IMG/VR virus record: IMGVR_UViG_3300045125_000071
Location: 1 to 64,000 of that record
DNA length: 64,000 bases
Reading direction: 5' to 3' (one strand)
Shown here: one piece after another, positions 10,706 to 62,656 of the stretch
How positions within the stretch are numbered: the first letter of the stretch is position 1
Layout: each line of letters starts with the position of its first letter
Position numbers and translations under genes: made by a program
The notes under the pieces: generated by a model
Seen by the model: the letters and a program-made list of their open reading frames with translations, nothing else
Told to the model about the DNA's origin: nothing
Databases searched by the model: none

Positions 10706-11535
10706 TTATAAACTAATAATAGATTGAAGATACTTTTTATATTCTCCCAATCCATTTTCTAAATTATATTTTGGTTCCCACCCATCCATCCATAAAATTT
10801 TATTTGAACATGTGTAGAACTGGTATCCAAATGGTATTTTATTTTCTTCATGATATGTAAATGGAATATCCATAATATCCAATATATCTTCGAATGTTCT
10901 TGATTCACCATAACCAACATCATAAAATTTTCCTTTAAGTTTTACATAATTGTCTTCAGCATATAAATTAGCATTTACAACATCTTTAACATATATAAAA
11001 TCTCTTTTAGGTTTTAATGGGAATAATTTACATTCTTCATGTTTTCTATGTTTAATAAACGACTGATATGCGACAGATGACATCCGTCCTTTATGTTCTT
11101 CCCCTGGACCATACACATTAAAATATCTAAGTGCAATACCATTGTTTGATATTACATATTTCTCTGCAACGTATTTGCTCCACCCATAAAGATTAGATGG
11201 ATATTTCCCATTATCACCATAATTCGCTGCCGATGATGAATAAATCATTTTTGTGTTAGTCTTTACACAATAATCAGTTAAAATCTTTGTGAATTCAAAA
11301 TTTAACTTCATCATGTAATTAACATCTGTCTCTAATGTATCAGAACATGCCCCAACATGAAAAATAACTTTTGGGTTGTTCTTTTTAAGAATACCTAAAG
11401 GTTTTCATCCCAATCAGAATCATCAAATATATCTTCGTTTATTTCAATAACAAAATATGAAGACATTCTTCTAATTGTGTTAGCTAAATTTTTTCCTATG
11501 AACCCTTTTGCCCCTGTTACTATAACATTTACCAT
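10706..11535 (-). CDS. hldD: ADP-L-glycero-D-manno-heptose 6-epimerase-like extended SDR (one indel region)
   Basis: VTGAKGFIG Rossmann motif at 11535 start; YSSSAANYG, YGWSK (YxxxK), LRYFNVYGPGEEHKGRMSSV, RDFIYVKDV. Confidence 0.85.
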
Positions 11536-12268
11536 GGTGTTACTACTCCTCTTTTTGATACTACTATTGATGACATTTCATTTTGCAACTACAATAGAGT
11601 CTAAAATGTTTTTGTTTGATGATATTTTAAAATAAACGATGCTGTAAATGTATCTCCAGCACCACTAACATCTATAGTTTCCTTTGGTGATGGTGATGGG
11701 AATATATCATTTTTGTATTTGACACCTTTAGACCCTAATGTGATTAAAATATTATCAAAATTTTTAAACCTTGATTATTTTTCGCTTCGTTTTCATTTAA
11801 CTTAACAAATGTGAATTTACTTATTGTTTCATCATCAAGTATTTTTTTTGAATCAAGTATAGATAACTTAGAAAGATTACCGATAATATTTAATGATTTA
11901 ATATTTAAAAACCCTTTATCATAATCACTTACAATTACAATGTCGTATTTTGGTATTTTTTCTAATAATTCGTTAGTTAGATTTATACCAGATATATTTT
12001 CCTCACCTTCATCTAATCTTAAAAACATATGATTACTTTTTTTATCAACGTATCTTGTCTTTGTAATTTTTTCATTTTGAAAAATTTGATTGATATTCAA
12101 TGATTTATCAAGTGATTTAAGATTGTTTAAAACATTACCTGACATTCCTTTATTTCTTATAATTTCTATTGGATTTAAAACAGGTACAGGTGCTTCTGGT
12201 GATAATCTTTTACAATCCCCATAAATAAAAACATCATCACAAACCTCACCTATTATTAATATTTTCAT
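11529..12268 (-). CDS. hldE: D-glycero-D-manno-heptose-7-phosphate kinase (stand-alone HldE/RfaE PfkB domain)
   Basis: RLSPEAPVPV, SDYDKG, KLNENEA and (after a frameshift) DVSGAGDT; stop overlaps the hldD start. Confidence 0.85.
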
Positions 12269-12330
12269 TTAAAAAAAATATCAATTTTTTTGCATATTCG
12301 AAAGCGTAAATATTTTTTGTAATTTATGAT

Positions 12331-12825
12331 TTAATTCTTAATATTGTCGATTGAAATTATATATTTTGATATGTTATCAATACCGTCATCTATATTTTTA
12401 AAATAAATCCTTTCTTCTTGCTCATCATAATCCGCCAGTTTGATTAAAAAATCTCTCACAACATTTTCTGGTTCATTTTCTAACCAATCGTATTCCCAAC
12501 TATTTTCATAATTCCACCCTGGCATGTAGGCAAATGGTTTAATTTTATATTTATTAGATAATTTATCCCCATCTAATGTAATTCTATAATCAGTTTTAAC
12601 TTGCCAAGTCGTATTCCTTTTATGAAAATTTTTATTTCTTGTAAAAGAAATATAGTTTAGTTGATGTCCTCTATAAAATTCTTCTGAAGTATTTAATTTA
12701 TTTGTTTTTAAAATGTTTTCTAAACCAGTTTTAGAAGTATAATGGTACAATAATCCGACTTGCTTTGATTCATTCAAAACAATAATCATGGATTTAATTC
12801 TTGATATTTGTTCTTGTAAATTCAT
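12331..12825 (-). CDS. putative ADP-ribosyltransferase-fold protein with an N-terminal pro-peptide
   Basis: MNLQEQISRIKSMIIVLNE leader, then LYHYTS, YISFTR and DEQEERI, in the order expected for ART catalytic motifs. Confidence 0.45.
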   Translation of the reverse strand: MNLQEQISRIKSMIIVLNESKQVGLLYHYTSKTGLENILKTNKLNTSEEFYRGHQLNYISFTRNKNFHKRNTTWQVKTDYRITLDGDKLSNKYKIKPFAYMPGWNYENSWEYDWLENEPENVVRDFLIKLADYDEQEERIYFKNIDDGIDNISKYIISIDNIKN

Positions 12826-12829
12826 AATA

Positions 12830-12836
12830 ATAAATA
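12830..12836 (-). promoter_or_regulatory. TATTTAT late-promoter candidate
   Basis: 4 nt upstream of ATG at 12825. Confidence 0.65.
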
Positions 12837-13628
12837 TTATACCACCATTGATTTATCTTCAATTGGTTTGTAGTGTATAATTTCTATTTTACCATCATCA
12901 TGAATCAATATTGCTGTCATTGATTCGACCCAGTCACCTGAATTTAAATAATGAACATTATCAATAATTCTATCCATTTCTTGGTGAATATGTCCACATA
13001 TTACTCCTTGACATCCATGATATTCGGCCATTTTTGCTGCGGTATTTTCAAAATCATTGACATAGTTTGTGGCGGTCTTTACTTTTTGTTTCAATGGTTT
13101 TGATATTGATTTATATTTAAAACCTCTGAATTTTCTCCATTTATTATATTGCGTATTCATCCATAACGCAATATCATAACCAACACTACCAATTTTTGAT
13201 AACCATTTATATTTTAACATGAAAATATCGATTTCATCGCCATGAAAAACAAAGTATCTTTTATTTTCAAATTTATCTTGGGTAATCCATTTATTAATAT
13301 TTATAACATGATTTTTTACTATTTTTATATTACCCATGTTAAAACCAATGTAGTCATCTAAGAATTCATCATGGTTTCCTCTAACCCATATGACTTCAGT
13401 TGTTTCAGATATTTTCAATAGTTTATTTACAACTTTAGTATGTTTTTTCTTCCATTTTGAACCTCTTTTCAATGCCCATCCATCTATTATATCTCCATTC
13501 AAAATTAAAGTATTACAAGAGGTATTGTCTAAAAATTCTATTATTTCATTTGTCTTTGAATCTCTTGTACCCAAATGTAAATCAGAAATTACAATCATAT
13601 TAACCATTCTATCAGTTTTATAAAACAA
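12837..13628 (-). CDS. metallophosphoesterase of the LpxH2/PlcP (phospholipase C) type
   Basis: All five motifs: ISDLHLG, NGDIIDGW, RGNHDEF, FHGDE, ICGHIH; C-terminal YLNSGDWVESMTA. Confidence 0.85.
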   Translation of the reverse strand: MFYKTDRMVNMIVISDLHLGTRDSKTNEIIEFLDNTSCNTLILNGDIIDGWALKRGSKWKKKHTKVVNKLLKISETTEVIWVRGNHDEFLDDYIGFNMGNIKIVKNHVININKWITQDKFENKRYFVFHGDEIDIFMLKYKWLSKIGSVGYDIALWMNTQYNKWRKFRGFKYKSISKPLKQKVKTATNYVNDFENTAAKMAEYHGCQGVICGHIHQEMDRIIDNVHYLNSGDWVESMTAILIHDDGKIEIIHYKPIEDKSMVV

Positions 13629-13680
13629 ATGGTTAGTAACACCGTACTAACAATTATTAATTCTAAATTTATTTTCCTTT

Positions 13681-14355
13681 TCATGACCAATAATTATGTG
13701 ATTTGTAAAACCAAGATTTATTATTTCTATTAAACCAACTTTTTATGATTAGTACATACATCCACATAACACCTTTTTTATCAAATCGTCTGCCAGATGT
13801 ATATATATACTTTTTAACTAACTTATGTCTATCTTTAAGTATCATCCTACTTAATAACCAATCTTCGGCAACTTTTACGTTTTCGTTAAATTTTCCACAT
13901 TCGATAAATTTTTTTGTTCTCCATAATTGAAATCCACCTATTACAAAAGTCTCTGGTAGTATTTTTTGTAATAAATGAAACCCATTCCATAACCAATCAT
14001 ATTTTTTATCATCACATCGATATATACAAGAAACCAAATCATATTCGTCAATCGATTTTAAACAAGTTTCAATTAACTTTGTATCATATATCATCATATC
14101 CGCATCTAAAAATAAAACGAAAGGGGTTTGACATAAATCAAACCCCTTGTTTCTTGCAATAGATGGCAATCCACCATCGATTATTTTTATATGATTTTTG
14201 TTTTTAACATAATCATGTAATTCAACGTCTTTAATATCTGAAGAATCTGCAATAATTATATCAAAATTTATAGATTGTAATTCTAATAATTTTAAGCATT
14301 TTATAAGTGTATGACCTTCATTTTTTGATGGTATAACAATTGTTAGAATATTCAT
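13681..14355 (-). CDS. family 2 glycosyltransferase (GT-A)
   Basis: IVIPSKNE, IIIADSSD, ARNKG, LFLDADM (DxD), AEDW, TSGRRF. Confidence 0.9.
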   Translation of the reverse strand: MNILTIVIPSKNEGHTLIKCLKLLELQSINFDIIIADSSDIKDVELHDYVKNKNHIKIIDGGLPSIARNKGFDLCQTPFVLFLDADMMIYDTKLIETCLKSIDEYDLVSCIYRCDDKKYDWLWNGFHLLQKILPETFVIGGFQLWRTKKFIECGKFNENVKVAEDWLLSRMILKDRHKLVKKYIYTSGRRFDKKGVMWMYVLIIKSWFNRNNKSWFYKSHNYWS

Positions 14356-14360
14356 CTATT

Positions 14361-14367
14361 ATAAATA
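14361..14367 (-). promoter_or_regulatory. TATTTAT late-promoter candidate for the GT2-phosphoesterase pair
   Basis: 5 nt upstream of ATG at 14355. Confidence 0.65.
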
Positions 14368-14383
14368 TCATATATTTTTTTGT

Positions 14384-17300
14384 TTATATGCGTGTAATTT
14401 CGCAACTTGACCCAGAACAAGCCATTGAACCATATTCTCCAATGTCCTTATATTGTGGTTTATCAAGAATTTCGCCAAAGTTAACTTCCTTGAACTGACG
14501 AGTAACGGTTTCCCACTTGTGGAAAAGATGCACATCCTTCAAGCAATATACCATTTTTCTCATGTCACCCTTAAAGTAATTCTTAGCGAATTTCTTTGCC
14601 CTATCTAACCAATATTTCTTCAATAATACTTGTTCCCTTGTTCCTGTAATTGGTAGAGCATATTCTGTGCCCATATTAATTAAAGTATCACAAGCTAACC
14701 AAAGGTTGTTGTCGAAGTAATGGAGACCATCTACAACCAATCCAGAAGCCAATACAGCGCCTTTTCCATATTCCTCGACAAGTTCTTCGAGGTTAAGTAC
14801 TGAGGTGAATGGTGCTTGGTTAAAATCCTTATCGCCGTAGTCTGACATGAATGATACCGCAGTAAATTCTTCTTTATTATCCCAAATGTAATCTACAATA
14901 ACATCCTTGTCATCAATGATTACAGTGCAACTGGTATTGTGGTTTACAGGATTATATATACATTTTTCTGGATTTGTACCAGCATTAACCCAGTTTTGTT
15001 GGACTAATTTGATAAGTTCAAGGTGTTTAATACCCTTCATATCTTTTTTGAACAACCCTTTTTTAGGGTTCTCAACAGGGACGAATACAACATAATCACT
15101 TTTTGTTTGCGACCAAACACTATCTTCTAATAAGAAGTCCATATTATCAACCAACCATTTAGCAGTATTGGATTCTTTGTTTAATTGCATGACTCTGAAA
15201 TATTTTTCAGAATGTTCTGGATGAATACCAGATGCTGTACCAAGAACTACAGATGCATTACCTGAAGGTTTAACGCAAGTGGTTCTTGCTGCCTGATTAA
15301 TATCAATAACTTCTGCAAGTTCCTTATTTGTTTTCTTAACAATCTCAGCACCTTCTTTAAGAAGTTCGGCGTTGAATAACATCGGATTATTCATCCAACC
15401 AGTTATGCTCACACCAAGCAACGCCTCTCTTGCAAAAATCTTTTCACTAACCTCTCCAAGATATGGGAAACTGTTATATCCCGCCTGAAGTGTACCAAGG
15501 ATTGTCGCGTCTTTACATGCCTTAAAGAATTTCTCTTTTGTTGTACATTTTTCAGCATTAATCTCTGATAGGTTGCATTGTTTAGTTAAAACATTATTAA
15601 ATAACCCTTGATGTTTATATTGTTCTTCAAAACAATATGAATTGTGGAATCCTTCTAATTGTACAATACTATCAATACATTGATATTTACCCTTATATTT
15701 TACTTCACTTGGCTGAAACCTAGTTTTGGTTGACCATAATTCTCCACAATCACTAATTTGAACATACCAAACATCTCTATTTCTTGTTCCAAAGTTTGTT
15801 ACCTCGCCCTTTTTGCTACAAAGATTAACAGTAGAATTTACCCCAATTTTAGTTAATAAAAGTTGTAAATCCCTAATCTTGTTTTCTTCACCATAAATTC
15901 TGGCTTTGTTATTATATGTAATTGTTCCATCGGTATCTATCCAACCAGCAATAAATGCAAGAATTGATTTTTTACTCCAACTAAAAATTTCAGAAGGTAA
16001 ACCATCTTCATATTTTAATTTATGAGATAGTTCCTTATCTAACTTATTAAAAGTAACATTATAATATTCTGTTTCAATTCCATTATAAGATTCTTTTAAT
16101 TTTTTACCAATTGTACCATCAACAAAAGGATATTCATTAGAAAAATTACTTTCATAGACAGAAGCAAAGGGGGTTCTGTATTTATCACCTATCTTAGGAC
16201 AAGTACCATCGCCTAAAACAAAACCATAATCATAAGCATAAATTTCATCGTGACCAAAATCAAAATCATTTACATTACTTCTTGGTACTTGAAGTTTATA
16301 TTTGGTAGTTTTTAGCAATTCAATTAAATCTTTTGTCTCGATTTCTTTAAATTGTTTTTCAAATCTATTTTTAACTAACCATTTATGGTTTTCAGTACAA
16401 TCCAAATATGAACCATCATTTAATTTTACCCTAAAAAGTTTTCTATTTGTACCAGTAAGAATAGGTTTGACTTTTGACCAATTTTCTCCATTCCAAATTT
16501 CAACCTCCCTATTTTCATCAACTACCTTACCAATCATTTCAATTCCATCCTTAGTAATTAATTTTGTTTCATATGAAACACACCCTTGGATACCAAACTT
16601 ATGTTTGTTCACACTCACATAATGCTCAACATCTTCATAGTCGATTTTTGAGAAATCAACCTCATCGAGTATTGGTAATTTCAATATTTCAAAACATGGG
16701 TTGAACATATCAAACCAAGAATTTGCGAATACAAAACCAATATCGTTTGCACCATCGTTTAGTTTAACAAGATAATCAAACTGGTCTTTAGTCACTTTAC
16801 CCCTTAACAAGAGAACCGAATTGTTCGACCTTGCTCTTTGTGGATTTTCTTCTCTCCAATTACCCGTTTTAGCATGAATCATTTCGGTATCATTTGGGTC
16901 AACAATCATATTTAATGCTGACCTTCTAACCCCGCCAGACAATACCGCATCAGATGCATGACAAATGATGTCAAATGCCAAGATTGGCCTGATTTTATTT
17001 CCTTCCTTATCAATCCACCTTTCGATTAATTGTTCGATTTTTTCAAGGGATTGTTTAAGTCCATCGGGACCAGGAGCCTTGAATCCGCCACTAATGAATG
17101 TACCCTTTTCTCTAACTTGTGAATAATCAAATTTAACCTCATATCCTGCATATTCAGGGAATGGTTGGTTGTCAACAAAATATGATGACAAAAGAACGCC
17201 GAGTGAGTCCGCCCAACCTTCAATAGAGTCAGGTACAACAAATGTCTTAGCACCTAAAACCCTTTTCTGAATACGACTAAGATTATTAACAAATGGGATT

Positions 17301-17656
17301 AACAATCCGCCACCAACACCGCAACCAGATAAACCAAGATAAAATATTTCTTGGAATACTCTATTCCTCATTATGTGTGTACTAGTACAGTTATACATCC
17401 TTGTGTTATGTCTCAAAATTTCAGTATGTCTATACTGCAAATTTCTTTGAGATGCTAACACAACCTGGTCTTCCATACTTTCAAGAGCAGATTGTAGATA
17501 TTCTTCAATCTGATAATTAGAGTATTTTTGCCTATGACCATTTATAATGTCTGCACAAGCCTCTTTCCAATTTTCGTACCTTCCAATTTCATCCCTCCAT
17601 TTGAAGTAATCGGAATACAATTTTAAGTCGCTAAGAAATTTCTTACCTTTTTGCAT
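14384..17656 (-). CDS. nrdJ: class II (B12-dependent, monomeric RTPR-type) ribonucleotide reductase with intein
   Basis: YNCT, GGVRRSA, NPCFEI (radical Cys), CNLSEIN, TTCVKPSGNAS, C-terminal ACSGSSCEI; intact 1090-aa ORF. Confidence 0.93.
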   Translation of the reverse strand: MQKGKKFLSDLKLYSDYFKWRDEIGRYENWKEACADIINGHRQKYSNYQIEEYLQSALESMEDQVVLASQRNLQYRHTEILRHNTRMYNCTSTHIMRNRVFQEIFYLGLSGCGVGGGLLIPFVNNLSRIQKRVLGAKTFVVPDSIEGWADSLGVLLSSYFVDNQPFPEYAGYEVKFDYSQVREKGTFISGGFKAPGPDGLKQSLEKIEQLIERWIDKEGNKIRPILAFDIICHASDAVLSGGVRRSALNMIVDPNDTEMIHAKTGNWREENPQRARSNNSVLLLRGKVTKDQFDYLVKLNDGANDIGFVFANSWFDMFNPCFEILKLPILDEVDFSKIDYEDVEHYVSVNKHKFGIQGCVSYETKLITKDGIEMIGKVVDENREVEIWNGENWSKVKPILTGTNRKLFRVKLNDGSYLDCTENHKWLVKNRFEKQFKEIETKDLIELLKTTKYKLQVPRSNVNDFDFGHDEIYAYDYGFVLGDGTCPKIGDKYRTPFASVYESNFSNEYPFVDGTIGKKLKESYNGIETEYYNVTFNKLDKELSHKLKYEDGLPSEIFSWSKKSILAFIAGWIDTDGTITYNNKARIYGEENKIRDLQLLLTKIGVNSTVNLCSKKGEVTNFGTRNRDVWYVQISDCGELWSTKTRFQPSEVKYKGKYQCIDSIVQLEGFHNSYCFEEQYKHQGLFNNVLTKQCNLSEINAEKCTTKEKFFKACKDATILGTLQAGYNSFPYLGEVSEKIFAREALLGVSITGWMNNPMLFNAELLKEGAEIVKKTNKELAEVIDINQAARTTCVKPSGNASVVLGTASGIHPEHSEKYFRVMQLNKESNTAKWLVDNMDFLLEDSVWSQTKSDYVVFVPVENPKKGLFKKDMKGIKHLELIKLVQQNWVNAGTNPEKCIYNPVNHNTSCTVIIDDKDVIVDYIWDNKEEFTAVSFMSDYGDKDFNQAPFTSVLNLEELVEEYGKGAVLASGLVVDGLHYFDNNLWLACDTLINMGTEYALPITGTREQVLLKKYWLDRAKKFAKNYFKGDMRKMVYCLKDVHLFHKWETVTRQFKEVNFGEILDKPQYKDIGEYGSMACSGSSCEITRI
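15578..16582 (-). mobile_element. 335-aa intein with LAGLIDADG endonuclease, ending in Gln
   Basis: GIQG|CVSYETKLIT...CTENHKW...YGFVLGDG...FIAGWIDTDG...YCFEEQYKHQGLFNNVLTKQ|CNL; removal leaves a 755-aa RNR. Confidence 0.92.
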
Positions 17657-17677
17657 TTTTTAGTTTTATTTATTTAT

Positions 17678-19045: not shown

Positions 19046-19049
19046 CTTA

Positions 19050-20522: not shown

Positions 20523-20546
20523 TAATTATTATTACAGAGTTAAAAA

Positions 20547-21534: not shown

Positions 21535-21564
21535 ATATTAATTTTATTAAATTTTAGAGAAAAG

Positions 21565-50992: not shown

Positions 50993-51062
50993 AAATAATT
51001 CAATATTTTATATAAAAACCAAAATAGTTAGAACATGCAATCTAAAGAAAAATATTCGCAAA

Positions 51063-51719: not shown

Positions 51720-52649
51720 TTATGAGAATGTTATTGTTATTGTTTGTGTTGGGGCATTGCAAGTTGATTGGTTTGTACCACCCCAGTTTGCGTTTCTTAT
51801 AAATGGTCTCATTGTATATTTCCCAGCGCCACCACAAGCACATAAACCATCGTTGGTAAACTCAATAGCATTGGCTGGTGTTGGAGATGTTACACTACAG
51901 TTTTGTGCTACACGCCAAGTATTGCTGCCGATTACAACCGATACGCTTGTGCCTGTTGTGCCTGTCCTAAGTGCATTTGCTAATGTTTGTACATTACTTG
52001 CGTGTGATACCGTTATACTACTACCATTTGAGCTTGACCATACAAATTGTGTGTAAGTTCCTGTTAATTGTCCCCTAAATGTTGTCCACGCATTTTCTAT
52101 TGTTGTACCAGGACTTACACCATTTGTAAATGTTTGCGGAAAAGTTACACCCGTACTTTGTGTTGGTGTCACACTTGGTGTTGGTGTATTGGTTGTTGTA
52201 ACAGTTGGTGTTACGGTTGGTGTTGGCGTATTTGTCCTAGTTTGTGTTTGTGACGGTGTGACAGTTGGAGTTGGTGTGGCAGATTGTACTGGTGTACTGC
52301 TTGGTGTAATATCAAATATATCAGATGTTGTCAAATCAGATGATGTTACCCACATATTTGATTGATTGTCTGCCCAAGCCAATACATCAGATATTGTACT
52401 ACCAGTTGAACCAAAGATTTCAAAAAATAAATGCATTGTAAATCATCATTTGCAACATGAATACTTGGTCCCTGGAACTCTTTTGCGACATATATTGTAT
52501 ATCCACCTACTGGTGGAGTAATCCCATTATAAAATCCAGTTATATTTGTTGGGCCATAATCCGCAGCACCACTTACACCAACACGAAAATTTTCTCCTTG
52601 TTGTGGATAAGATACTACTTGTTGTACCTGATTTTATGTAATTGGGCAT
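51720..52649 (-). CDS. virion decoration/fibre-like protein with Thr-Pro linker
   Basis: Start MPNYIKSGT (indels); TPT repeat stretch; Cys-containing C-terminal domain. Confidence 0.6.
52150..52310 (-). repeat. Thr-Pro mucin-like coding repeat
   Basis: TPSSTPVQSATPTPTVTPSQTQTRTNTPTPTVTPTVTTTNTPTPSVTPTQST. Confidence 0.85.
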
Positions 52650-52665
52650 GTTAAATTTTATAAAA

Positions 52666-52710: not shown

Positions 52711-52733
52711 TAATGACAAAAAAATAATATAAC

Positions 52734-53223: not shown

Positions 53224-53252
53224 TCTATATTAGGTTATTCCCCATTTATTTT
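53214..53252. terminator. terminator at the convergent junction
   Basis: TGGGGAATAA...TTATTCCCCA 10-bp stem, T-rich tail on the + strand. Confidence 0.7.
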
Positions 53253-54154
53253 TTAAGTAAGTTTCTGTATTTGTTATTTCAGTATTTGTTAATGCTTTTG
53301 TATAAAGTAATAATTCACCAATATAACCATCTAAATCTTCTGTTGCATCTGCGGTTTCACCTATGTAGAATACAGATGTATCAGAACTTGTTTGTTCCAC
53401 TTGGATTTTGTGAAAATGTCAATGTTCTATCTACACCATCAATTCTAAATTTCAACCTATTACTTATTTCCTGTTTGTGTCCCATCAAATACTGCGGTAA
53501 ATACATGAAACACTGTTGTTATTGTAACACCACTTGTTTTCCCAAACCTTGGCCCATACCAATTTGATAATCACCGCTTCTTATTGATAACCAATTTGCG
53601 TTTCTTTGTGCATTATTAGTACCTAATTGAGTCAAGGTATTTGTTGCAGATGCGTTGTTAAATCTACCCACAATAATCATGGTTGCACCTGTCAATGATT
53701 GGAAATTTGTTATTGGATTAATGGTAAACAAATCATTATCACCATCGAAATAAGCAACATCTTTCCCATTTTGAAAACTTGTTACCTGTTTTGGTCTTTT
53801 ACCACCAGTTGAGTTAGCTGGTTTAACAGTACCCGTAGATTTGTCATTTACAGAGTTAATATCTGTACCTGTCCCTAATGTAATGGTTGTGTTGTCAGAA
53901 AAATCATACCAAACTTCCAAAGTTGGGTCATTAGCAACAGGTGGTGGTATTGTACTTGTTGATGGTGTAATTGTTGGAGTCACTGTATTGGTCGGTGTAA
54001 CACTTTGTGTTGGAGTCACTGTATTGGTCGGTGTTGGAGTAGGAGTGTTAGTCGGAGTATTGGTAGGTGTTGCAGTAGGTGATATCACCTGGTTTGGTTT
54101 TCTTTTTCCAAATCTATTACTGCTACCCCTAAATGATGATATTCTATTTATCAT
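53230..54154 (-). CDS. LamG/concanavalin-A-like lectin domain protein with Thr-Pro linker (tail fibre/adhesin)
   Basis: LEVWYDFSD..TIT, YFDGDNDL, and after a frameshift YIGELLLYTKALTNTEI..TETYLKNKW. Confidence 0.7.
53955..54085 (-). repeat. Thr-Pro coding repeat
   Basis: SPTATPTNTPTNTPTPTPTNTVTPTQSVTPTNTVTPTITPST; TGGAGTCACTGTATTGGTCGGTGT occurs twice. Confidence 0.85.
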
Positions 54155-57100
54155 GACCCAAATGATGATAAGGAACCTAAAACATCCCAAGTTGAACCAA
54201 CTCTAAATGCTGTAAGACCAATTATTTCTGTTTTATTTGCACTACCAGATGGTACAATACTATCGGCCCATTTAATCGTCACATTGCTTGAATTAAATTG
54301 ATATGCCGATGCACTATATGGAGTAACACCTTGTGTAACAACAAACGTCATCGTTAATGCTTTATTATTTGTTGTTGGAACATTTGTTATGTTCCATGTT
54401 CCATTACCAGTCAATCCTGTAAGATAAAATATTGAACCACTTGTATAATCAAATGTATTTCCACTGAACCCGCCACTGACCGCTAAATTCTCACTAACTC
54501 CCCCTTATATCCAATGAACCAGTTATTGTTAGCCCATTTGTATAGTTGCCAGAACCACTAACATCTAAAGAATAGATTGGTAAAGGTTGATTTATACCTA
54601 TTCTACCATTAGCTGAGCCCAAAAATGGTGATAATGAAGATGTTTCAAAATACGAACCAGTACCAAATATTAAACCACCCAAGTTAATACTATCTTTTCT
54701 TCCGTTTTCAAGTGATATATTTGTACCAATAATTATATTATTAGAATTAACACCTGTATTATCGGGTGATTTACCAACTTGGTATCCTATAAAAGTAGAA
54801 AAAGAAGCACTTCTTGCATATTGACCAGTATGATATCCTATAAAATTTGAATACGATGCGCTATATGCCGATTCACCAGCATATTCACCAATTAAAACAG
54901 AATATTTTCCATGTTCAGAATCTAAACCAGCACGACTACCTATAAAAATACTTCCAGTCACAGACCTTACACTATACCCAGCGTATGTTCCAATAAATAC
55001 AGATTCAAACGCACTTGCATATTCTCCAGCATTATTTCCTATAAACGTAGAAAAACTTGAACTCAAAGATTCTCTACCAGAAGCATAACCAACAAAAACC
55101 GAAACTCTTGAATTTCTTGTTCTCCATCCAGATTGGTATCCAATAAATGTATTTATATCTGATACTCCTTGTATTTCCATACCCGCTTCTCTTCCTATAT
55201 ATTGTGAAAGATAACTATTTGATGAACTATACCCAGCGTTTTGTCCAATAAAAATTGAACTATTATTGTTTACTAAAGATGTGTTATATGTGTACAATGA
55301 ACTTCCTGTTACTGCAAATGGATATGATGAACTAACTGCATTATTTGCCCAACTTGATGTTCCTTGTAATGAACCTGTAAAATTAGTTGCCTCAATAGAA
55401 CCTGTAACTGTTAATCCATTTGTATAGTTACCAGAACCACTGACATCTAAAGAATAGATTGGTAAAGGTTGATTTATACCTATTCTACCATTAGCGGAAC
55501 CAGAAAAAGGATTACCTGTTGTTGTTGCATATGACCCAGTACCGAATATTAAACCGCCTAAATTAATACTATCTTTTCTATCATTTTCAAGAGTGATATT
55601 AGTACCAATTATTGTGTTATTGCTTCCTATACCATTACTACTAACTCTAGCACCAACGTTATAACCAATCAATATTAAATCTCTCTTTAATGTTACTGAT
55701 ACGCCATTTATTCCAACACCAGCACCATTTCCTATTATATTTGAATGTATAACATTGGTAGTTTTAGCACCAGCAGAAAGACCTATCATTGTGTTCGGGC
55801 CCTTATCATCCATAACTGAACCAGACCCTGCATTTGTACCTATTAAAATAGTATTTTGTAATCCTTGAGAATATATTCCCGCATTAGTTCCTATTGCAAT
55901 AATATTAGTAGAAGGTGATGAATTTTGACCCGCTGAAGTACCTATTAAAATAGCATCATTTGTAGTACTACCTAAATTAGAACCCGCTTGATAACCTATT
56001 ATATTAGAATTAGATAATGCTCTAGTTTGATACCCCGCTTGATAACCAAAAATATTACTATTTTGTACAGTAAAGAATTGATTTGCTCGTCCAGCATCCA
56101 CACCAACTACAATATTGTTTGTTGTTACACTTGTATCTGATGGTGTTTTTGGTATCCATGAATTTAATGAATATATTGCGCTTCCTGTTACTGCAAATGG
56201 ATATGATGAACTAACTGCATTATTTGCCCAACTTGATGTTCCTTGTAATGAACCTGTAAAACTATTAGCAACAACAGAACCAGTGACTATCTGATTACCA
56301 TTAAATTGATTTGAACCTGTCGTTACTAAATTTGTAGGGATTCCTGTAAATGCGGTTGTTTGTATTGTTGAATCTGGAAATGATATTGTTCCTTCAGGAT
56401 TAAACGACCAAAGATAATTATTTGATACAATATTGATTTGTGGATTTTCACCACTTGGTATACTAACATTACTATTTTCGCCACCCAAATATAAAGAGGC
56501 ACTTGAATTATCTTGAACACCACCAGCCCTTATATGGATATGATTTGGATATGTCGGGTCAATTATCAAATATTGGTCATATTCAGTGTCTTTTCTGGTT
56601 TCAATTCAATTGTTGTAAAACCATTACCATCACCCGAACTATTTGGAACAAAACGTAAACTACCTGAACCACCAATAATATCATTCGGAATAGTTAATGA
56701 ACCAGACCTATCAAAAGTAAAAGTATGACTACCTGAAAACCAATTTGTTCCAATGTATGCAGCCGTATCATCAACCCACATATATTGATTTGAATCACTA
56801 CTTTGTAACTCAGCCCATCCACCTTCAGCAGCTTTTAAATCAATACTACCAGAATTACCACTATCATTTGCGATTATTTGTGCACCACCATCAAAAGTGA
56901 TAGACCCCGTAACAACAATATCTGATTCTCCATTTATTATTAAAGAACCTGTTATTTTAACGGAACCTGTAAAGTTGTGGGTATCATCAAATGAATTACC
57001 GAATTGAGTCGAACCACTTATTGTTTCTATAACAATATTTGATACGGATGAACTTAAAATATATTGTTGTGCGGTTAATGAACCGCTTATAATCAAATCT

Positions 57101-57276
57101 CCATTTATTGTTTGACTACCTGTAAACATATGTGAACCACTATTTACCAATACTTGTCTTAAATGATTTAATGTGTGTTGAAATGTAACACCAGAATAAA
57201 CTACGGTTGTCACACCACTTAAAGGTAAATTAGATAACGAACCGCTTGTTAATTCTGTAATTTTCTTTGTTGCCAT
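54151..57276 (-). CDS. long tail fibre/adhesin (~1040 aa) with two Gly-rich repeat cassettes
   Basis: ORFs 56566-57276, 54494-56569 and 54151-54414 joined across indels; ~14-aa N.(F/I)IG..AG repeats typical of trimeric adhesin/fibre beta-rolls. Confidence 0.7.
54539..56261. repeat. tandem ~880-bp cassette duplication inside the fibre gene
   Basis: Identical 81 bp at 55302-55382 and 56181-56261 (offset 879); identical 53 bp at 54561-54613 and 55443-55495 (offset 882); interiors divergent. Confidence 0.9.
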
Positions 57277-57280
57277 TTAC

Positions 57281-57287
57281 ATAAATA
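57281..57287 (-). promoter_or_regulatory. TATTTAT late-promoter candidate
   Basis: 4 nt upstream of fibre ATG at 57276. Confidence 0.65.
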
Positions 57288-57288
57288 T

Positions 57289-58389
57289 TTAATATACTAA
57301 TATGTTATTATCTTCTGTTAATATTATTTCATCTAATTCTGTCATTATTGCAAATTCTGAAAATTGCATTATTATGTTTATACACTCATCTTGACATTCA
57401 TTCACATTATAATATGGAATAATTTCTGTTTTGTAATAATGTTTTATATTTGGATAACCTAATGGTTCTTCAAAATATTTTATTTGTTTTAAATTAAACT
57501 CAGTTGTTCCAGTATGAATATTTGTAGAACCAGATGTACCGCCACCCCATATTTGTACAATATTATTATCAGAACCCCTAACAGAAGGAACAACTTCTTC
57601 CCAATCTTTTACTTTATATATTAATCTACCATTTAGGTATATCTTTAAAGTACCTAATCTATAATCTCTTTCGGATAACCAATTTTTGTTTAATGTTTCG
57701 ATTATTGTATATTCTTCAGTGGCCCCTGTAATTACATCAATTGGATTTGTAACCGTCCATCCCGTTATATAATCGTTTGAACCGCCTCTATTTAAAATGT
57801 CACAATTATCCAAATAATTGTTTCGTTTAAAAACTATTGTAATATCAAAATCATTTGATGTACCACCACTACATAAAACATTTGTTTGTCCAGAAGCAAT
57901 ATAATTCAATTCCGTATATCCTGATGTTGTTTCACAATATCCCGAAATGTGATAAGATTCCCATTTAATTCTACCATCATCAGTAAAACTGAACGAAAGG
58001 TTATTATCTAAATAAAATCTTTCGTTTGTTTCATTTTCAATACCCCAGTAATAAAATGTACTACCACTTGTCCAGGGTAACGTTTCTCTATTGAAAACAA
58101 AATCTAAAGTCCACCCATATTCTGTTCTTTTTCTAATTGTAAAATCACAAGTATTTCCCGTATAAGGCTCTGTAATATTTATAGACCATGGTTTAATACT
58201 ATCTAATGTTACATCTAAACAAGAAGAATCTATTGTTAACCCAGTATAAGTAATTTGATTGTTAAAATCTAAAACATCTGTATCAAAATCAATTTCTGAC
58301 GTACCAAATTCATAATCATAGAATTGAGATGAATCTAATCTTAATTTTAGTCTTTGACCCCAGTATCTTAAAATATTTTGACTATTCAT
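57289..58389 (-). CDS. virion protein, possible lectin-like fold
   Basis: Intact 366-aa ORF; GWTLDFVF, GTLKIYLNG, LKQIKYFEEPL; late motif upstream. Confidence 0.55.
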   Translation of the reverse strand: MNSQNILRYWGQRLKLRLDSSQFYDYEFGTSEIDFDTDVLDFNNQITYTGLTIDSSCLDVTLDSIKPWSINITEPYTGNTCDFTIRKRTEYGWTLDFVFNRETLPWTSGSTFYYWGIENETNERFYLDNNLSFSFTDDGRIKWESYHISGYCETTSGYTELNYIASGQTNVLCSGGTSNDFDITIVFKRNNYLDNCDILNRGGSNDYITGWTVTNPIDVITGATEEYTIIETLNKNWLSERDYRLGTLKIYLNGRLIYKVKDWEEVVPSVRGSDNNIVQIWGGGTSGSTNIHTGTTEFNLKQIKYFEEPLGYPNIKHYYKTEIIPYYNVNECQDECINIIMQFSEFAIMTELDEIILTEDNNILVY

Positions 58390-58395
58390 GTATTA

Positions 58396-58426
58396 ATAAA
58401 TATCTTTCATAACATTTGATATTTAT
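58396..58426. promoter_or_regulatory. divergent pair of TATTTAT motifs
   Basis: ATAAATATC (58396) and GATATTTAT (ending 58426) inverted between divergent ATGs at 58389 and 58442. Confidence 0.65.
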
Positions 58427-58441
58427 ATAAAAAACGATTTG

Positions 58442-59711: not shown

Positions 59712-59712
59712 T

Positions 59713-60087: not shown

Positions 60088-60089
60088 CA

Positions 60090-60808
60090 ATGAATGATAG
60101 TATTCTTTTTCAAATACTGGTTGAACAAAATATTCTTAAAACAACGCAAACTAAACCAATAGTAAATGCTATTAAGAATAAAAGAAAAATCACCTTTGAT
60201 TATTATGGGCCAAGAAAACCAAAAAAGATAGTGTAAGACCTGGAAGAAGAATAAAAGCGGAACCGTATGCTATTGGTTTAAGTAAAAAAGGTAAATTAAT
60301 TATTAGAATGTGGGTTGAACCACCATCAATCTCAAAAAAGGTTTTGCAAAAACCAACTGGAGAACATTTATGGGTGTTAGAATGAGAAATGTTGTAATAA
60401 CAGATGAAACATTTACAGGCGATAGACCAGGTTATAAACAAGGAAATGATAATTCAATGACTGTTACTTATGTTAGTTTAGATAAATCTACACAACCAAA
60501 ACCAGTTAAACAAAAGACACCAATAGAGAAGAAACCCGAAATTAAAAAACCAGTAAAATTACCTACAGCGACAAAACCACCAGTAACAGTTAAAGAACCC
60601 GAAAAATTACCACAACCTAAACCAGAAAAAAACCAGAAGAAATTAAAAAAGAACCTGAGGTTGAAAAACCTGAAGATTTAACTAATAAAGAAAGGAACTA
60701 CCACAACCAAAACCAGAAGATAAACCATCAGATGATGTTTTAGATAATAATTTGAAAGAAGAATTAATAAGAATGAAAGCTTTAATGTTTTCACAAAAAT
60801 TCATATAA
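60090..60808 (+). CDS. stand-alone WYL-domain protein with Pro/Lys-rich tail (frameshifted)
   Basis: NAIKNKRKITFDYYG...R.IKAEPYAIG...GKLIIRMW...WRTF...RMRNVVITDETF. Confidence 0.7.
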
Positions 60809-60821
60809 TTAATAAAAAATT

Positions 60822-61394
60822 ATGTCACAACAGCAAGGTACAATATCACCAAATGAATTAATGACACGTTTGGTACAAGCAAAAAAAGTAATGAATAAAG
60901 TCGAAACAGGTAATTTTGAAAAAGGTCATGTAAATGAACAAATTTTAAAATCAAATCCTGAAGATTTAGTCAATATTCAAAATATCCAACCGTCACAAAA
61001 ACCAGTTGCACATCAATTAAATGCAGATAAAATTAATAGTTCCAAATTACCTGATGCAATTAAAAAAGCGATGATTGAAAATCCAATACCACAAATCACA
61101 TTAAATGATAATATCAATATGGATTTTATTCAGGGTGCTAAAAAATTAATGGAAAAGGAAGGATTATCAAAAAAACCATCACAAAAACTTTATGAAAGTC
61201 AACAGAATTTTTCAAATATTGATATGAGTTCTTTAACCACATTGATTGAAAATACAATTCGTAAAGTGTTGGATGAAAAATTAAATCAAATTTTAACAGC
61301 TCAACAAACAGCAACTATTAATGAAAATTTAGTTCTTAAAGTTGGTGATTCAATATTTAAAGGAAAAATTACTGGCGTAAATAAAGCCAAATAG
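60822..61394 (+). CDS. hypothetical protein
   Basis: Intact 190-aa ORF; KLPDAIKKAMIENPI. Confidence 0.7.
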   Translation: MSQQQGTISPNELMTRLVQAKKVMNKVETGNFEKGHVNEQILKSNPEDLVNIQNIQPSQKPVAHQLNADKINSSKLPDAIKKAMIENPIPQITLNDNINMDFIQGAKKLMEKEGLSKKPSQKLYESQQNFSNIDMSSLTTLIENTIRKVLDEKLNQILTAQQTATINENLVLKVGDSIFKGKITGVNKAK

Positions 61395-61441
61395 TTTATT
61401 TTTTTATTTTTTTACTATTATTTAGACATAATATTATATTA

Positions 61442-62656
61442 ATGTCTAAAATAAAATTATTAGCAATCCCGTCAGATACACACGGCGTAGGTAAGTTTAG
61501 AATTCTTGACCCATTCAAATATATTGGGGATAACTTTTCAGATGATATCCATGTCGATATTATGTTTGATGCACCAGACCTGGATAGTACATTTGATGGT
61601 TATGACATCGTATATTTACATTCTTTTATTCACAAAACATCACACGAGGCTAATGTAAAAAGAATTAAATGGTTAAAATCAAAAGGTATCAAAGTTATTG
61701 TGGATATCGATGATTTATGGTTTGTTGACCAAAGACATCCAATGTATCATCAAGTTATTGCAACAAAAGTACCAGAAAAGAAAATTGAATTACTGAAATT
61801 AGCAGATTATGTAACAACAACAACACCAGTATTCAGTAAAACAATAAAAGATAGATTAAATCTAAAAAATGTAATTATTTTTCCGAATGCAGTAAATGAA
61901 GACGAGGAACAGTTTAAAGTAAACAAAATACCTTCTGAAAAAATTAGATTTGGGTGGCTTGGCGGCAGTAGTCATTTACATGATATTGAATTATTAGAAC
62001 AAGGAATATCAAGCATACATGCATCTTATAAAGATAAAGTTCAATTTGTTCTTTGTGGTTTTGATTTAAGAGGGACGGTAACAGAAATCAAAAAAGAAAC
62101 TGGCGAGCAAGTACAAAGACCAATACAACCACTAGAAACTGTTTGGTTTAAATATGAAAGCATATTCACAGACAAATATAGAACATTAGACCAAGAATAC
62201 AAAACATATTTGTTTAATTTCACAGAAGCACCGTATAATGATACTAATAAACCATATGTTAGAAGATGGACAAAAAACATTAATACATATGCAACGAATT
62301 ACAATCATTTTGATGTTTCATTGGCCCCTCTTGTAGAATCAATGTTTAACGCTAACAAATCACAGTTAAAAGTTATCGAAGCTGGTTTCCATAAAAAAGC
62401 TATTATTGCAAGTGAAACAAATCCTTATACCATAGATTTGGTAAATTCAATAGAAAATGGTATATTTAACAACAAGGGCAATGCGCTTCTTGTTTCATCG
62501 AGAAAAAACCATAAACAATGGGCGCAACATATGAAAAAATTAATCGAAAACCCTTCCATGATTGAAGACCTGGGAAATAGATTATACGAAACAGTAAAAG
62601 ACACATATTCATTAAAAAAGTGTGTAACGATAGAGTTCAATTTTTTAAAACCATAA
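61442..62656 (+). CDS. GT-B fold glycosyltransferase (GT4-like)
   Basis: VIVDIDDLW, ADYVTTTT..F, FPNAVN, RFGWLGG, DVSLAPL...FN..KSQLKVIEAG...IIAS. Confidence 0.85.
   Translation: MSKIKLLAIPSDTHGVGKFRILDPFKYIGDNFSDDIHVDIMFDAPDLDSTFDGYDIVYLHSFIHKTSHEANVKRIKWLKSKGIKVIVDIDDLWFVDQRHPMYHQVIATKVPEKKIELLKLADYVTTTTPVFSKTIKDRLNLKNVIIFPNAVNEDEEQFKVNKIPSEKIRFGWLGGSSHLHDIELLEQGISSIHASYKDKVQFVLCGFDLRGTVTEIKKETGEQVQRPIQPLETVWFKYESIFTDKYRTLDQEYKTYLFNFTEAPYNDTNKPYVRRWTKNINTYATNYNHFDVSLAPLVESMFNANKSQLKVIEAGFHKKAIIASETNPYTIDLVNSIENGIFNNKGNALLVSSRKNHKQWAQHMKKLIENPSMIEDLGNRLYETVKDTYSLKKCVTIEFNFLKP

What the first reader, a model, noticed from the sequence alone, without database searches (positions are those of the whole stretch)
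10706..62656. Possible virion glycosylation system: sugar-nucleotide enzymes, two GTs and mucin-like Thr-Pro virion proteins
Seen: HldE/HldD, a late-promoter GT2 (13681-14355) and a GT4-like enzyme (61442-62656), plus two late genes with long Thr-Pro linkers (52150-52310, 53955-54085) and a Ser/Thr/Gly-rich adhesin-like fibre. Known: Thr-Pro linkers are classic O-glycosylation sites, and some mycobacteriophages glycosylate their virions with their own GTs. Inference: this phage may O-glycosylate or heptosylate its fibres for protease resistance or receptor/antibody evasion. The link is circumstantial.
Basis: inference. Interest (0 to 1): 0.6.

Follow-up and report, generated by a model that had tools for sequence, protein, structure and literature searches.

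The report
Scattered sugar genes beside Thr-Pro fibres
A large freshwater phage carries several sugar-handling enzymes and tail-fibre proteins with long Thr-Pro spacers, but they are separate, independently inherited pieces, and nothing yet shows that the enzymes put sugars on the virus particle.

Summary
The listed genes exist, with corrections. The window is the first 64 kb of a 251-kb freshwater jumbo-phage contig. The contig is full of one-base homopolymer deletions, so even the DNA polymerase reads as five or more pieces. 'HldE' is only the kinase half, 'HldD' is an epimerase, and both are frame-broken by these errors. No adenylyltransferase, isomerase, GmhB or heptosyltransferase was found in the 251 kb. 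The closest relatives of the kinase and epimerase are the 'LPS cluster' genes of T4-like cyanophages. The GT2 is real and travels as a fixed pair with a metallophosphoesterase. The GT4-like enzyme is a core gene of a very abundant lineage, at about 70% identity in 80 of 80 related loci. The two Thr-Pro stretches are linkers inside larger, frame-broken fibre genes. One of these genes is the Ser/Thr/Gly-rich fibre itself, which ends in a lectin-like domain. Thr-Pro tracts are a hallmark of the lineage: 51 of 56 loci have them, up to 212 aa long. The heptose genes and GT2 are accessory, each found in 2 of 12 relatives. Heptosylation is unsupported. O-glycosylation of fibres by the core transferases is neither supported nor excluded. 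Host-surface glycan remodelling plus plain linkers is the most likely reading.

The parts
10706..11526 (-). ADP-heptose-6-epimerase-like (HldD-like) SDR gene, read in two frames (11526-11410 and 11389-10724)
   Evidence: TIGR02197 positions 1-25 and 64-314 fall in different frames. It is 64% identical to the intact 269-aa gene of relative G005 and 29-32% identical to the cyanophage T4-GC308 epimerases. The break lies between 11368 and 11410, a stretch that holds short A/T runs.
11538..12268 (-). Heptose-7-phosphate-kinase-like PfkB kinase (HldE domain I only), with a frame change near 11760-11771 and two in-frame stops near 11590
   Evidence: TIGR02198 matches in three pieces. It is 53-62% identical to the intact 254-aa kinase of G005 and 35-43% identical to the cyanophage 'putative carbohydrate kinase' T4-GC305. 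The GAGD motif is present.
12331..12825 (-). 164-aa ORF of unknown function between the kinase and the phosphoesterase
   Evidence: No family match in Pfam, NCBIfam or PHROGs beyond a chance-level hit.
12837..13628 (-). Calcineurin-like metallophosphoesterase (weakly LpxH-like), the fixed partner of the GT2
   Evidence: PF00149 E 2e-16 and NF003743 E 2e-10, the latter below its cut-off. It lies next to a GT2 homologue in five different contexts.
13681..14355 (-). Small soluble GT-A family-2 glycosyltransferase with an invariant DxD motif
   Evidence: PF00535 E 1e-15. 699 homologues at 43-78% identity. D84-A85-D86 are invariant. The profile matches K4CP, TarP, GalT1 and TarS in the PDB.
14360..14367 (-). 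Lineage-specific upstream motif (GA)TATTTATA, 4 nt before the GT2 start codon
   Evidence: Sequence read. The motif is about 10-fold enriched upstream of genes in G005.
51720..52633 (-). Fibre-island protein 1: N-domain (52346-52633, another frame), TP tract (52150-52310) and Cys-containing C-domain
   Evidence: Frames seen. The intact 358-aa counterpart in relative L041 has the same three parts, and its C-domain is 91% identical. The break is at a T6 run at 52427.
53230..56569 (-). One long fibre gene in at least five frames: Ser/Thr/Gly-rich repeat shaft (54494-56569), middle domain (54151-54504), TP tract (53955-54085) and C-terminal ConA/LamG-like domain (53230-53950)
   Evidence: Overlapping frames. 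A G5 run sits at the first junction. Laminin_G_3 positions 112-150 lie at 53275-53391. The repeat shaft has no family or PDB match.
56566..57276 (-). 236-aa fibre-associated protein
   Evidence: Homologues in 17 of 80 loci. Its N-terminus is 60% identical to the start of an 885-aa TP-tract ORF in relative L055 and 43% identical to the N-terminus of a 1200-aa ORF in G005.
57289..58389 (-). Conserved 366-aa module that borders the variable fibre island
   Evidence: Homologues in 67 of 80 loci. In 29 distinct ORFs of relatives the same module is fused, through a TP tract starting near residue 370, to variable C-domains.
58420..58427 (+). TATTTATA motif at the head of the conserved plus-strand block that contains the GT4-like gene
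   Evidence: The equivalent gene in G005 also carries the motif.
61442..62656 (+). Core GT-B (GT4-like) glycosyltransferase
   Evidence: phrog_7162 E 3e-40. At least 8000 database relatives, hundreds of clusters near 70% identity. Present in 80 of 80 related loci within a conserved block with dUTPase and PhoH. The AF2 model (pLDDT 72.6) matches GlgM, MshA, BshA, TreT, PglA and SdgB.

Best explanation
The finding joins three unrelated things in a jumbo myovirus of a very abundant, uncultured freshwater lineage. The lineage has about 31% GC, and a full genome is about 335 kb.

1. **An accessory, mobile sugar-nucleotide cassette.** It holds a PfkB kinase and an SDR epimerase of the type found in T4-like cyanophage 'LPS' clusters. 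Here it lacks its nucleotidyltransferase and cupin partners, so it must lean on host enzymes. Next to it sits a conserved GT2 plus metallophosphoesterase pair. The most likely role is to redirect or decorate host envelope glycans during infection. This is an inference from what such clusters are held to do.

2. **Two core soluble glycosyltransferases.** These are the GT4-like gene and a GT2-like gene at 66.6 kb. They sit in a conserved block with dUTPase, PhoH and a sigma-like factor. Their acceptor is unknown.

3. **A hypervariable tail-fibre island.** Its proteins are beads on a string: conserved anchoring modules joined by Thr-Pro tracts to exchangeable distal domains, one of them a lectin-like LamG domain. 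I infer that the tracts act as extended, stiff spacers and as repetitive DNA at which domains can be swapped.

The frame breaks in all these genes are sequencing errors.
For: **Identity and kinship of the cassette.** The intact five-gene version in complete relative G005 holds a DUF6071-like gene, a cupin, an rfaE-II nucleotidyltransferase, the kinase and the epimerase. The published reading of such clusters is host LPS or capsule modification (PMC7824862).

**Accessory status and dispersal.**
- The kinase is in 2 of 12 relatives' records and the GT2 in 2 of 12.
- The two sit in different places in G005.
- The GT2-phosphoesterase pair recurs in five contexts, once beside a homing endonuclease gene.

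**Core status.** The GT4-like gene is in 80 of 80 loci and the 66.6-kb GT2-like gene in 73 of 80.

**The fibre island.**
- It is variable: 1-7 of 80 loci share the distal domains.
- TP tracts are nevertheless in 51 of 56 loci, and up to six tracts occur in one protein.
- The conserved 366-aa module is fused through a TP tract to variable ends in 29 ORFs.
- The C-end of a LamG domain is present.

**TP tracts without transferases.** They occur in complete viral genomes with no GT1 or GT2 hit.

**Sequence errors.**
Against: - Core transferases held at about 70% identity across a diverse lytic lineage are odd for host-specific surface remodelling. They fit a function on the phage's own material better.
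- The GT2 carries the same start-proximal motif as the sheath and baseplate genes.
- In one relative the GT2-phosphoesterase pair follows the portal and prohead-protease genes directly.
- TP tracts of 80-240 aa are far longer than a spacer needs and resemble mucin domains.
- 6 of the 14 most complete TP-tract viral records do have a GT1 or GT2 hit, which may be above background, but I had no baseline.
- No acceptor of any of these enzymes was shown. The host is unknown.
Confidence: 0.5

Rival explanations
1. Virion O-glycosylation. One or both core soluble glycosyltransferases (the GT4-like gene, the 66.6-kb GT2-like gene, possibly the GT2-phosphoesterase pair) add sugars in the cytoplasm to Thr residues of the mucin-like TP tracts of fibre proteins before assembly. 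This would stiffen and protect the tracts, as mycobacteriophages glycosylate capsid and tail-tube ends.
For: - Both the transferases and the TP tracts are lineage-wide.
- Tracts reach 212 aa in the 80 related loci. In G005 tracts span about 200-240 aa, with six in one protein.
- The GT4 fold class includes cytoplasmic protein O-GlcNAc transferases such as SdgB, and GT2 profile hits include GalT1 of the Fap1 pathway.
- The GT2 shares the upstream motif with structural genes, and in one relative it follows the head genes.
- The precedent is cited in PMC12619734 and PMC12363180.
Against: - The co-occurrence is a single lineage-level event.
- The fold matches are generic. The best are small-molecule transferases (GlgM, MshA, BshA, TreT).
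- There is no sequence kinship to mycobacteriophage transferases. The GT4-like gene has no Mycobacterium phage among the named genera of its 141 hits (five minor genera were not named in the output), and the GT2 matches nothing in 50,697 phage records.
- The GT4-like gene sits among dUTPase, PhoH and sigma-factor genes, not structural genes.
- TP tracts exist in complete viral genomes without GT1 or GT2 genes.
Confidence: 0.2
2. Heptosylation of fibres. The phage makes ADP-heptose with HldE and HldD and transfers heptose to Ser/Thr of the fibre, as TibC and AAH do for autotransporter adhesins.
For: The kinase and epimerase best match the heptose-pathway models. The fibre shaft is Ser/Thr/Gly-rich and repetitive.
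Against: - No GT9/BAHT-type transferase was found. The only hit scores 11.7 bits at E 0.012.
- No adenylyltransferase, GmhA or GmhB is present in 251 kb.
- All scores are far below the equivalog cut-offs, even for the intact G005 genes.
- The kinase is absent from 10 of 12 relatives' records, 9 of which carry TP-tract fibres.
Confidence: 0.03
3. DNA hypermodification. The nucleotide-sugar genes and one or more transferases glycosylate a modified base in phage DNA to escape restriction, as in T-even phages.
For: - The GT2 lies directly after the ribonucleotide reductase here, and next to ThyA, Dam and an intein-containing gene in a 324-kb relative.
- The GT4-like gene lies beside the dUTPase, and its phi92 homologues sit near the DNA polymerase.
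- DNA glycosylation is one reading offered for core transferases of another jumbo lineage (PMC12619734).
Against: - The only ThyA-family gene scores as ordinary thymidylate synthase: 310 bits on a trimmed sequence against a cut-off of 327.
- The 'two' ThyA genes of the relative are one gene split by an insert.
- dUTPase plus ThyA point to ordinary thymidine.
- No hydroxymethylase, base kinase or known DNA glucosyltransferase family was seen.
Confidence: 0.08
4. The sugar-nucleotide genes are decaying pseudogenes, a relic of a lost cyanophage-type module with no function.
For: Both genes carry frame breaks and stops. The module lacks two or three genes present in G005.
Against: - Essential genes such as PolB carry the same kind of break.
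- The PolB breaks coincide with one-base homopolymer deletions relative to close relatives with intact genes.
- Outside the breaks the genes keep 53-64% identity to intact homologues, with their motifs preserved.
Confidence: 0.05

Closest known systems
Heptose-type module of T4-like cyanophage 'LPS' clusters (P-SSM2 PSSM2_309-313; S-SM2 SSM2_200-207; T4-GC 304/305/306/308)
   Same: The kinase is 35-43% identical and the epimerase 29-32% identical. Both share the shortened domain lengths of about 250 and 270 aa. Relative G005 has the same four-gene set with a nucleotidyltransferase and a small cupin 'isomerase'.
   Different: This genome has only the kinase and the epimerase. Their neighbours are a metallophosphoesterase, a GT2 and a ribonucleotide reductase rather than a large 15-gene cluster. 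The phage is not a cyanophage relative: its PolB is 25-28% identical to Salinibacter phage PolB.
Mycobacteriophage virion glycosylation (Che8 gp110, Corndog gp38, Myrna; Freeman et al. 2023, as cited in PMC12363180 and PMC12619734)
   Same: Phage-encoded cytoplasmic glycosyltransferases occur together with Ser/Thr-rich stretches on virion proteins. The transferase genes need not be next to the substrate genes.
   Different: There is no detectable sequence kinship. In mycobacteriophages the targets are C-terminal extensions of capsid and tail-tube subunits. Here the candidates are internal TP linkers of fibre proteins. No chemical evidence exists here.
phi92 / Justusliebigvirus gp163-166 glycosyltransferase cluster (PHROG 7162)
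   Same: The GT4-like enzyme belongs to the same PHROG and is 28-29% identical over about 80% of its length.
   Different: phi92 has four adjacent transferases of unknown role, whereas here there is a single gene in a different block. No function is known for either, so the match gives no mechanism.
Pro/Thr linkers of bacterial multi-domain glycoside hydrolases (established knowledge)
   Same: Long (T/S)P-rich tracts join a conserved module to a carbohydrate-binding or lectin-like end domain (LamG here). In some native hosts such linkers are O-glycosylated, yet they also work unglycosylated.
   Different: These are cytoplasmically assembled virion proteins, so any glycosylation must be cytoplasmic. 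The tracts are much longer and multiple, up to six per protein and more than 200 aa.

Membership tests
ADP-L-glycero-D-manno-heptose pathway (GmhA, HldE/HldA, GmhB, HldE/HldC, HldD) | Heptose-7-phosphate kinase (rfaE domain I) above the equivalog cut-off | tested here: not met
   The best model is TIGR02198, but the score is 85 bits for the fragment and 129 bits for the intact G005 gene, against a cut-off of 345. It is kinase-like, and its substrate is not established.
ADP-L-glycero-D-manno-heptose pathway (GmhA, HldE/HldA, GmhB, HldE/HldC, HldD) | Heptose-1-phosphate adenylyltransferase (rfaE domain II) | tested here: not met
   No hit in the 251 kb with TIGR02199, or with the cyanophage or G005 proteins. 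It is present in relative G005. The record is estimated 75% complete.
ADP-L-glycero-D-manno-heptose pathway (GmhA, HldE/HldA, GmhB, HldE/HldC, HldD) | GmhA isomerase and GmhB phosphatase | tested here: not met
   No hit for TIGR00441 or TIGR00213.
ADP-L-glycero-D-manno-heptose pathway (GmhA, HldE/HldA, GmhB, HldE/HldC, HldD) | ADP-heptose 6-epimerase (HldD) above the equivalog cut-off | tested here: not met
   The best model is TIGR02197: 174 bits in the six-frame read and 203.5 bits for the intact G005 gene, against a cut-off of 274.6.
Autotransporter heptosyltransferases (BAHT: TibC, AAH) / GT9 | A GT9-fold heptosyltransferase gene | tested here: not met
   PF01075 gives only 11.7 bits at E 0.012, at 249.5 kb.
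Mycobacteriophage-type virion glycosylation | Transferases homologous to Che8, Corndog or Myrna enzymes | tested here: not met
   tblastn of the GT4-like gene against 50,697 phage records lists no Mycobacterium phage among the named genera of its 141 hits (five minor genera were not named in the output). The GT2 has no hit at all.
Mycobacteriophage-type virion glycosylation | Glycans shown on virion proteins | not testable with these tools
   This needs mass spectrometry or glycan staining of purified virions. No isolate or host is known.
Mycobacteriophage-type virion glycosylation | Ser/Thr-rich acceptor stretch on a structural protein | tested here: inconclusive
   TP tracts lie in fibre-island proteins. 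One is contiguous with a fibre shaft and a LamG domain. Virion membership is inferred from gene order, not shown.
Cyanophage-type sugar-nucleotide ('LPS') cluster | Homologous kinase (T4-GC305) and epimerase (T4-GC308) | tested here: met
   35-43% and 29-32% identity over nearly the full length.
Cyanophage-type sugar-nucleotide ('LPS') cluster | Accompanying nucleotidyltransferase (GC304) and small isomerase (GC306) | tested here: not met
   Absent here. Present in relative G005.
Glycosyltransferase family 2 (GT-A) | PF00535 above the cut-off, with a DxD motif | tested here: met
   58 bits against a cut-off of 23.3. D84-x-D86 are invariant in 30 homologues.
GT-B fold / GT4-like transferases | Two Rossmann-like domains with fold matches to GT4 enzymes | tested here: met
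   Foldseek probability 1.0 to GlgM, MshA, BshA, TreT and PglA (E 5e-10 to 1e-7; TM 0.5-0.6) with a model of pLDDT 72.6. Pfam Glyco_trans_1_4 scores only 23 bits, below its cut-off of 27.

The most novel reading that the evidence does not exclude
A cosmopolitan, uncultured freshwater jumbo-phage lineage builds its host-recognition fibres as strings of domains joined by mucin-like Thr-Pro tracts. There can be up to six tracts per protein, and single tracts exceed 200 aa. Its two core cytoplasmic glycosyltransferases would O-glycosylate these tracts. To my knowledge (no literature survey was made), this would be the first mucin-type glycosylated virion appendage described outside the actinobacteriophages.
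Probability: 0.17. Interest if true: 0.7.

Novelty: new member of a known kind. Interest (0 to 1): 0.35.

Why it matters
If the ordinary reading holds, the window adds one more phage with cyanophage-type sugar-nucleotide genes and generic glycosyltransferases. Its main practical lesson is that this contig cannot be annotated without correcting homopolymer errors.

The lineage-level picture is of more interest. A very abundant freshwater jumbo-phage group has two strongly conserved glycosyltransferases of unknown acceptor. Its fibre proteins have an unusually high content of long Thr-Pro tracts.

Showing what the core transferases modify (virion, DNA or host envelope) would assign a function to genes seen thousands of times in metagenomes. 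It could also extend virion glycosylation beyond mycobacteriophages.

Tried and rejected
- **Public reads over the frame breaks.** Only one freshwater study holds the sequence, at low depth. Four short exact contigs were found and none spans a break, so this was inconclusive.
- **Single-protein scan of IMG/VR with the kinase fragment.** No relatives found. They were found later through the whole-record search.
- **T4 late promoter TATAAATA.** It occurs 20 times against 19.9 expected, and it is in the wrong orientation at the GT2. A strand- and position-aware analysis replaced this test and found TATTTATA.
- **'Moraphage' membership (PMC12619734).** Rejected: no DnaK here or in 12 relatives.
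- **Two ThyA genes in a relative as a sign of a hydroxymethylase.** Rejected: they are two halves of one split gene.
- **Family searches for the TP-tract proteins, the fibre shaft and the block around the GT4-like gene.** Pfam, PHROGs, NCBIfam, PDB sequence and ESM Atlas searches gave nothing beyond the LamG end.
- **Independent co-occurrence test.** I looked at viral contigs with (TP)6 tracts, but it has no baseline frequency of transferases. It only shows that tracts can exist without GT1 or GT2 genes.
- **Complex prediction.** Not used, because a disordered linker with an enzyme is not a suitable case.

Full report
**What the window is.** The 64 kb are the first quarter of a 251,358-bp IMG/VR virus record. 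It is linear, CheckV estimates it 75% complete, and its GC content is 31%. It carries myovirus genes: gp25-like and other baseplate wedge proteins, a tail sheath, a family-B DNA polymerase, a DnaB-like helicase, a ribonucleotide reductase, dUTPase and PhoH. The only public runs that hold pieces of it are freshwater metagenomes. No cultured phage is close. Its PolB is 25-28% identical to that of Salinibacter phages.

**The contig is full of frame errors.**
- The essential PolB gene (48096-51007, minus strand) reads as at least five overlapping frames. These carry ExoI, ExoII, motif A and motif C in order.
- Genome-wide there are 2.64 stop-to-stop pieces per kb with a median of 97 aa. Two cyanophage regions give 1.4-1.6 per kb. 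The complete relative G005 (335,630 bp, 31.2% GC) gives 1.37 per kb with a median of 169 aa.
- Aligned to the closest relatives (L022 and L041, about 80-85% nucleotide identity), the PolB breaks at 49676, 50366 and 50763 are single-base deletions in T6, A6 and T8 runs.
- The junction between the fibre ORF and the next piece is a G5 run.
- So the frame breaks in the genes of this finding are sequencing artefacts, not evidence of decay.

**The sugar-nucleotide genes.**
- On the minus strand, 12268-11538 is a PfkB kinase whose best model is rfaE domain I. 11526-10724 is an SDR epimerase whose best model is ADP-heptose 6-epimerase. Each is split over two frames.
- Their nearest named relatives are the 'putative carbohydrate kinase' and 'nucleotide-sugar epimerase' of T4-like cyanophages (P-SSM2, S-SM2, S-CAM1/3, P-TIM68). 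There they sit with a small nucleotidyltransferase and a small 'isomerase'.
- G005 has the whole set, intact and contiguous: a DUF6071-like gene, a cupin, an rfaE-II-like nucleotidyltransferase, the kinase (53% identical) and the epimerase (64% identical).
- This genome has only the kinase and the epimerase. No adenylyltransferase, GmhA, GmhB, cupin or GT9 heptosyltransferase was found in 251 kb.
- All scores, even for the intact G005 genes, are well below the curated equivalog cut-offs. 'Heptose' is therefore the best guess for the sugar, not a demonstrated fact.
- Jumbo-cyanophage clusters of this kind are read in the literature as host LPS or capsule modification systems (PMC7824862).

**The GT2 and its partner.**
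- 13681-14355 is a small soluble family-2 transferase with an invariant DxD motif.
- It has 699 database relatives.
- In every context examined it is next to a calcineurin-like metallophosphoesterase:
  - beside the ribonucleotide reductase here;
  - at 17.5-18.9 kb in G005;
  - beside a split ThyA, Dam and an intein-containing gene in a 324-kb contig;
  - directly after the T4-type portal and prohead-protease genes in another contig;
  - beside TonB-receptor genes in a possibly bacterial contig.
- Its profile matches polymer- and glycan-building GT-A enzymes (K4CP, TarP, GalT1, TarS) with no clue to the acceptor.
- Among 12 relatives' records it was found in two.

**The GT4-like enzyme.**
- 61442-62656 is sub-threshold in Pfam, but it belongs to PHROG 7162 together with the phi92 gp164 group.
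- Its AlphaFold model (pLDDT 72.6) is a GT-B fold closest to GT4 enzymes: GlgM, MshA, BshA, TreT, PglA and SdgB.
- The word search returned at least 8000 relatives. Hundreds of clusters are near 70% identity and 406-408 aa, on contigs of up to 335 kb.
- In 80 related IMG/VR loci the surrounding block is syntenic. The 366-aa module is in 67 loci, an upstream 190-aa gene in 79, dUTPase in 78, PhoH in 76, and a second GT2-like gene at 66.6 kb in 73. A sigma-like factor also lies in the block.
- It is therefore a core gene of a very abundant lineage.
- Further transferase-like genes lie at 239-244 kb: a GT1-like gene, a Glyco_tranf_2_5 gene split by a frame error, and an FkbM methyltransferase.

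**The Thr-Pro proteins.**
Both belong to larger genes.
- The first (51720-52633) is a frame-shifted copy of a 358-aa protein that is intact in relative L041. That protein has an N-domain, a TP tract at residues 139-216 and a C-domain 91% identical to ours.
- The second is part of one long fibre gene (53230-56569). It holds the Ser/Thr/Gly-rich repeat shaft, a 117-aa middle piece, the TP tract and a ConA/LamG-like end domain whose C-terminal third matches Laminin_G_3. The 'adhesin-like fibre' and one 'TP gene' are thus the same protein.
- The distal domains are hypervariable, with homologues in only 1-7 of 80 loci. The TP tracts are not.
- 51 of 56 loci with at least 9 kb of upstream flank carry one to three TP-tract ORFs. 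The median longest tract is 81 aa and the maximum 212 aa.
- G005 has at least eight such ORFs, including a 1901-aa protein and a 1114-aa protein with six tracts.
- The conserved 366-aa module (57289-58389) is fused, in 29 distinct ORFs of relatives, through a TP tract at about residue 370 to variable ends.

**Is it one system?**
- The GT4-like gene and the TP tracts co-occur, but both are fixed in one lineage. That is one event, not repeated association.
- The kinase and the GT2 are each in 2 of 12 relatives' records, whereas 11 of the 12 carry TP tracts near the GT4-like gene. Those records are incomplete, at 32-100%.
- In the complete relative the parts are tens of kilobases apart.
- Outside the lineage, a (TP)6 DNA pattern occurs in at least 120 viral contigs, including giant-virus bins.
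- Of 45 such records, five have a GT4-like homologue and appear to be wider kin of this lineage.
- Of the six that are at least 90% complete, none has it, and three have no GT1 or GT2 family hit at all.
- TP tracts therefore do not require a phage transferase. I had no baseline to say whether transferases are enriched among TP-tract viruses.

**Expression signal.**
- T4's TATAAATA is not enriched: 20 sites against 19.9 expected.
- The reverse word, TATTTATA on the coding strand and usually preceded by A or G, lies 3-22 nt before the start codon of 66 of 455 genes in G005. The reverse orientation gives 18 and the expectation is 6.7.
- In the window it precedes the GT2 (4 nt), the gp25-like gene, the sheath gene, the 51063-51431 gene and the first gene of the block that contains the GT4-like gene.
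- Sharing it with structural genes is compatible with late expression. The timing was not tested.

**Weighing.**
- Heptosylation of fibres fails on the missing transferase and missing activation steps.
- DNA glycosylation has only neighbourhood hints. It faces an ordinary-looking ThyA plus dUTPase.
- Virion O-glycosylation by the core transferases remains open. In its favour are the strong conservation of the transferases, the mucin-like length of the tracts and the motif shared with structural genes.
- I put host-glycan remodelling by accessory cassettes, plus TP tracts as spacers and recombination joints, at about 0.5. I put virion O-glycosylation at about 0.2. The remainder is spread over the other rivals and unknowns.
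- All functional statements are inferences. What is shown is gene identity at family level, gene distribution, architecture and the error nature of the frame breaks.

Noticed in passing
window 48096-51007 (-), and genome-wide: The contig has about one frame-breaking error per kb, mostly one-base deletions in A/T runs of 5-8. The family-B DNA polymerase reads as at least five ORFs. Any gene call on this record needs frame correction.
   Followed up: yes
G005 genome-wide; window 10492, 14360, 38686, 41914, 51436, 58420: The strand-specific motif (A/G)TATTTATA lies 3-22 nt (mode 4) before start codons of about 15% of genes. This leaves no room for a Shine-Dalgarno site, so it may be a promoter for leaderless or near-leaderless mRNAs, perhaps read by the phage's sigma-like factor at 67.3 kb.
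   Followed up: partly
window 14384-17656 (-): The 1090-aa ribonucleotide reductase reads (by eye; no family scan was run) as interrupted by an intein with an endonuclease-like insert. A relative has an Intein_splicing hit in the gene upstream of its GT2.
   Followed up: partly
G000 66588-67208 (+) and 239400-244500 (+): More glycan genes lie outside the window. A core GT2-like gene is in 73 of 80 relatives' loci. A second cluster holds a GT1-like gene, a Glyco_tranf_2_5 gene (frame-broken) and an FkbM-type methyltransferase.
   Followed up: partly
window 12837-14355 (-); L104/L108, L246-L250: GT2 and a metallophosphoesterase form a fixed two-gene cassette that moves between contexts. One context is next to a SegE-type homing endonuclease gene, and one may be a bacterial contig with TonB-receptor genes. 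What the pair does together is unknown.
   Followed up: partly
G000 1-120 and 251240-251358: The two contig ends carry a GC-rich inverted repeat of about 38 nt, unlike the AT-rich genome. It may be an adapter or library remnant, which would fit an error-prone long-read origin.
   Followed up: no
window 62861-63688 (+): The dUTPase carries an N-terminal extension of about 130 aa with no family match. The fusion is conserved in 78 of 80 related loci.
   Followed up: no
L247 1-2006: In a 324-kb relative the thymidylate synthase gene is split into N- and C-terminal halves by a 230-aa ORF, probably a mobile insert.
   Followed up: partly
window 61442-62656 and database: This lineage is very abundant in metagenomes. 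There are at least 8000 GT4-like proteins on contigs of up to 335 kb, the full genome is about 335 kb, and no cultured member or named host exists. It is not the 'moraphage' group, since it has no DnaK.
   Followed up: partly
window 60370-60681 (+); relatives' loci about 8500-9340 (+): A Pro/Lys/Thr-rich protein lies about 1 kb upstream of the GT4-like gene on the same strand. It is 254-279 aa in relatives and frame-broken here. It is also low-complexity and T/P-rich, and its role is unknown.
   Followed up: no
window 10512-10694 (-): A small Cys-rich DUF5522 protein lies between the gp25-like baseplate gene and the epimerase.
   Followed up: no
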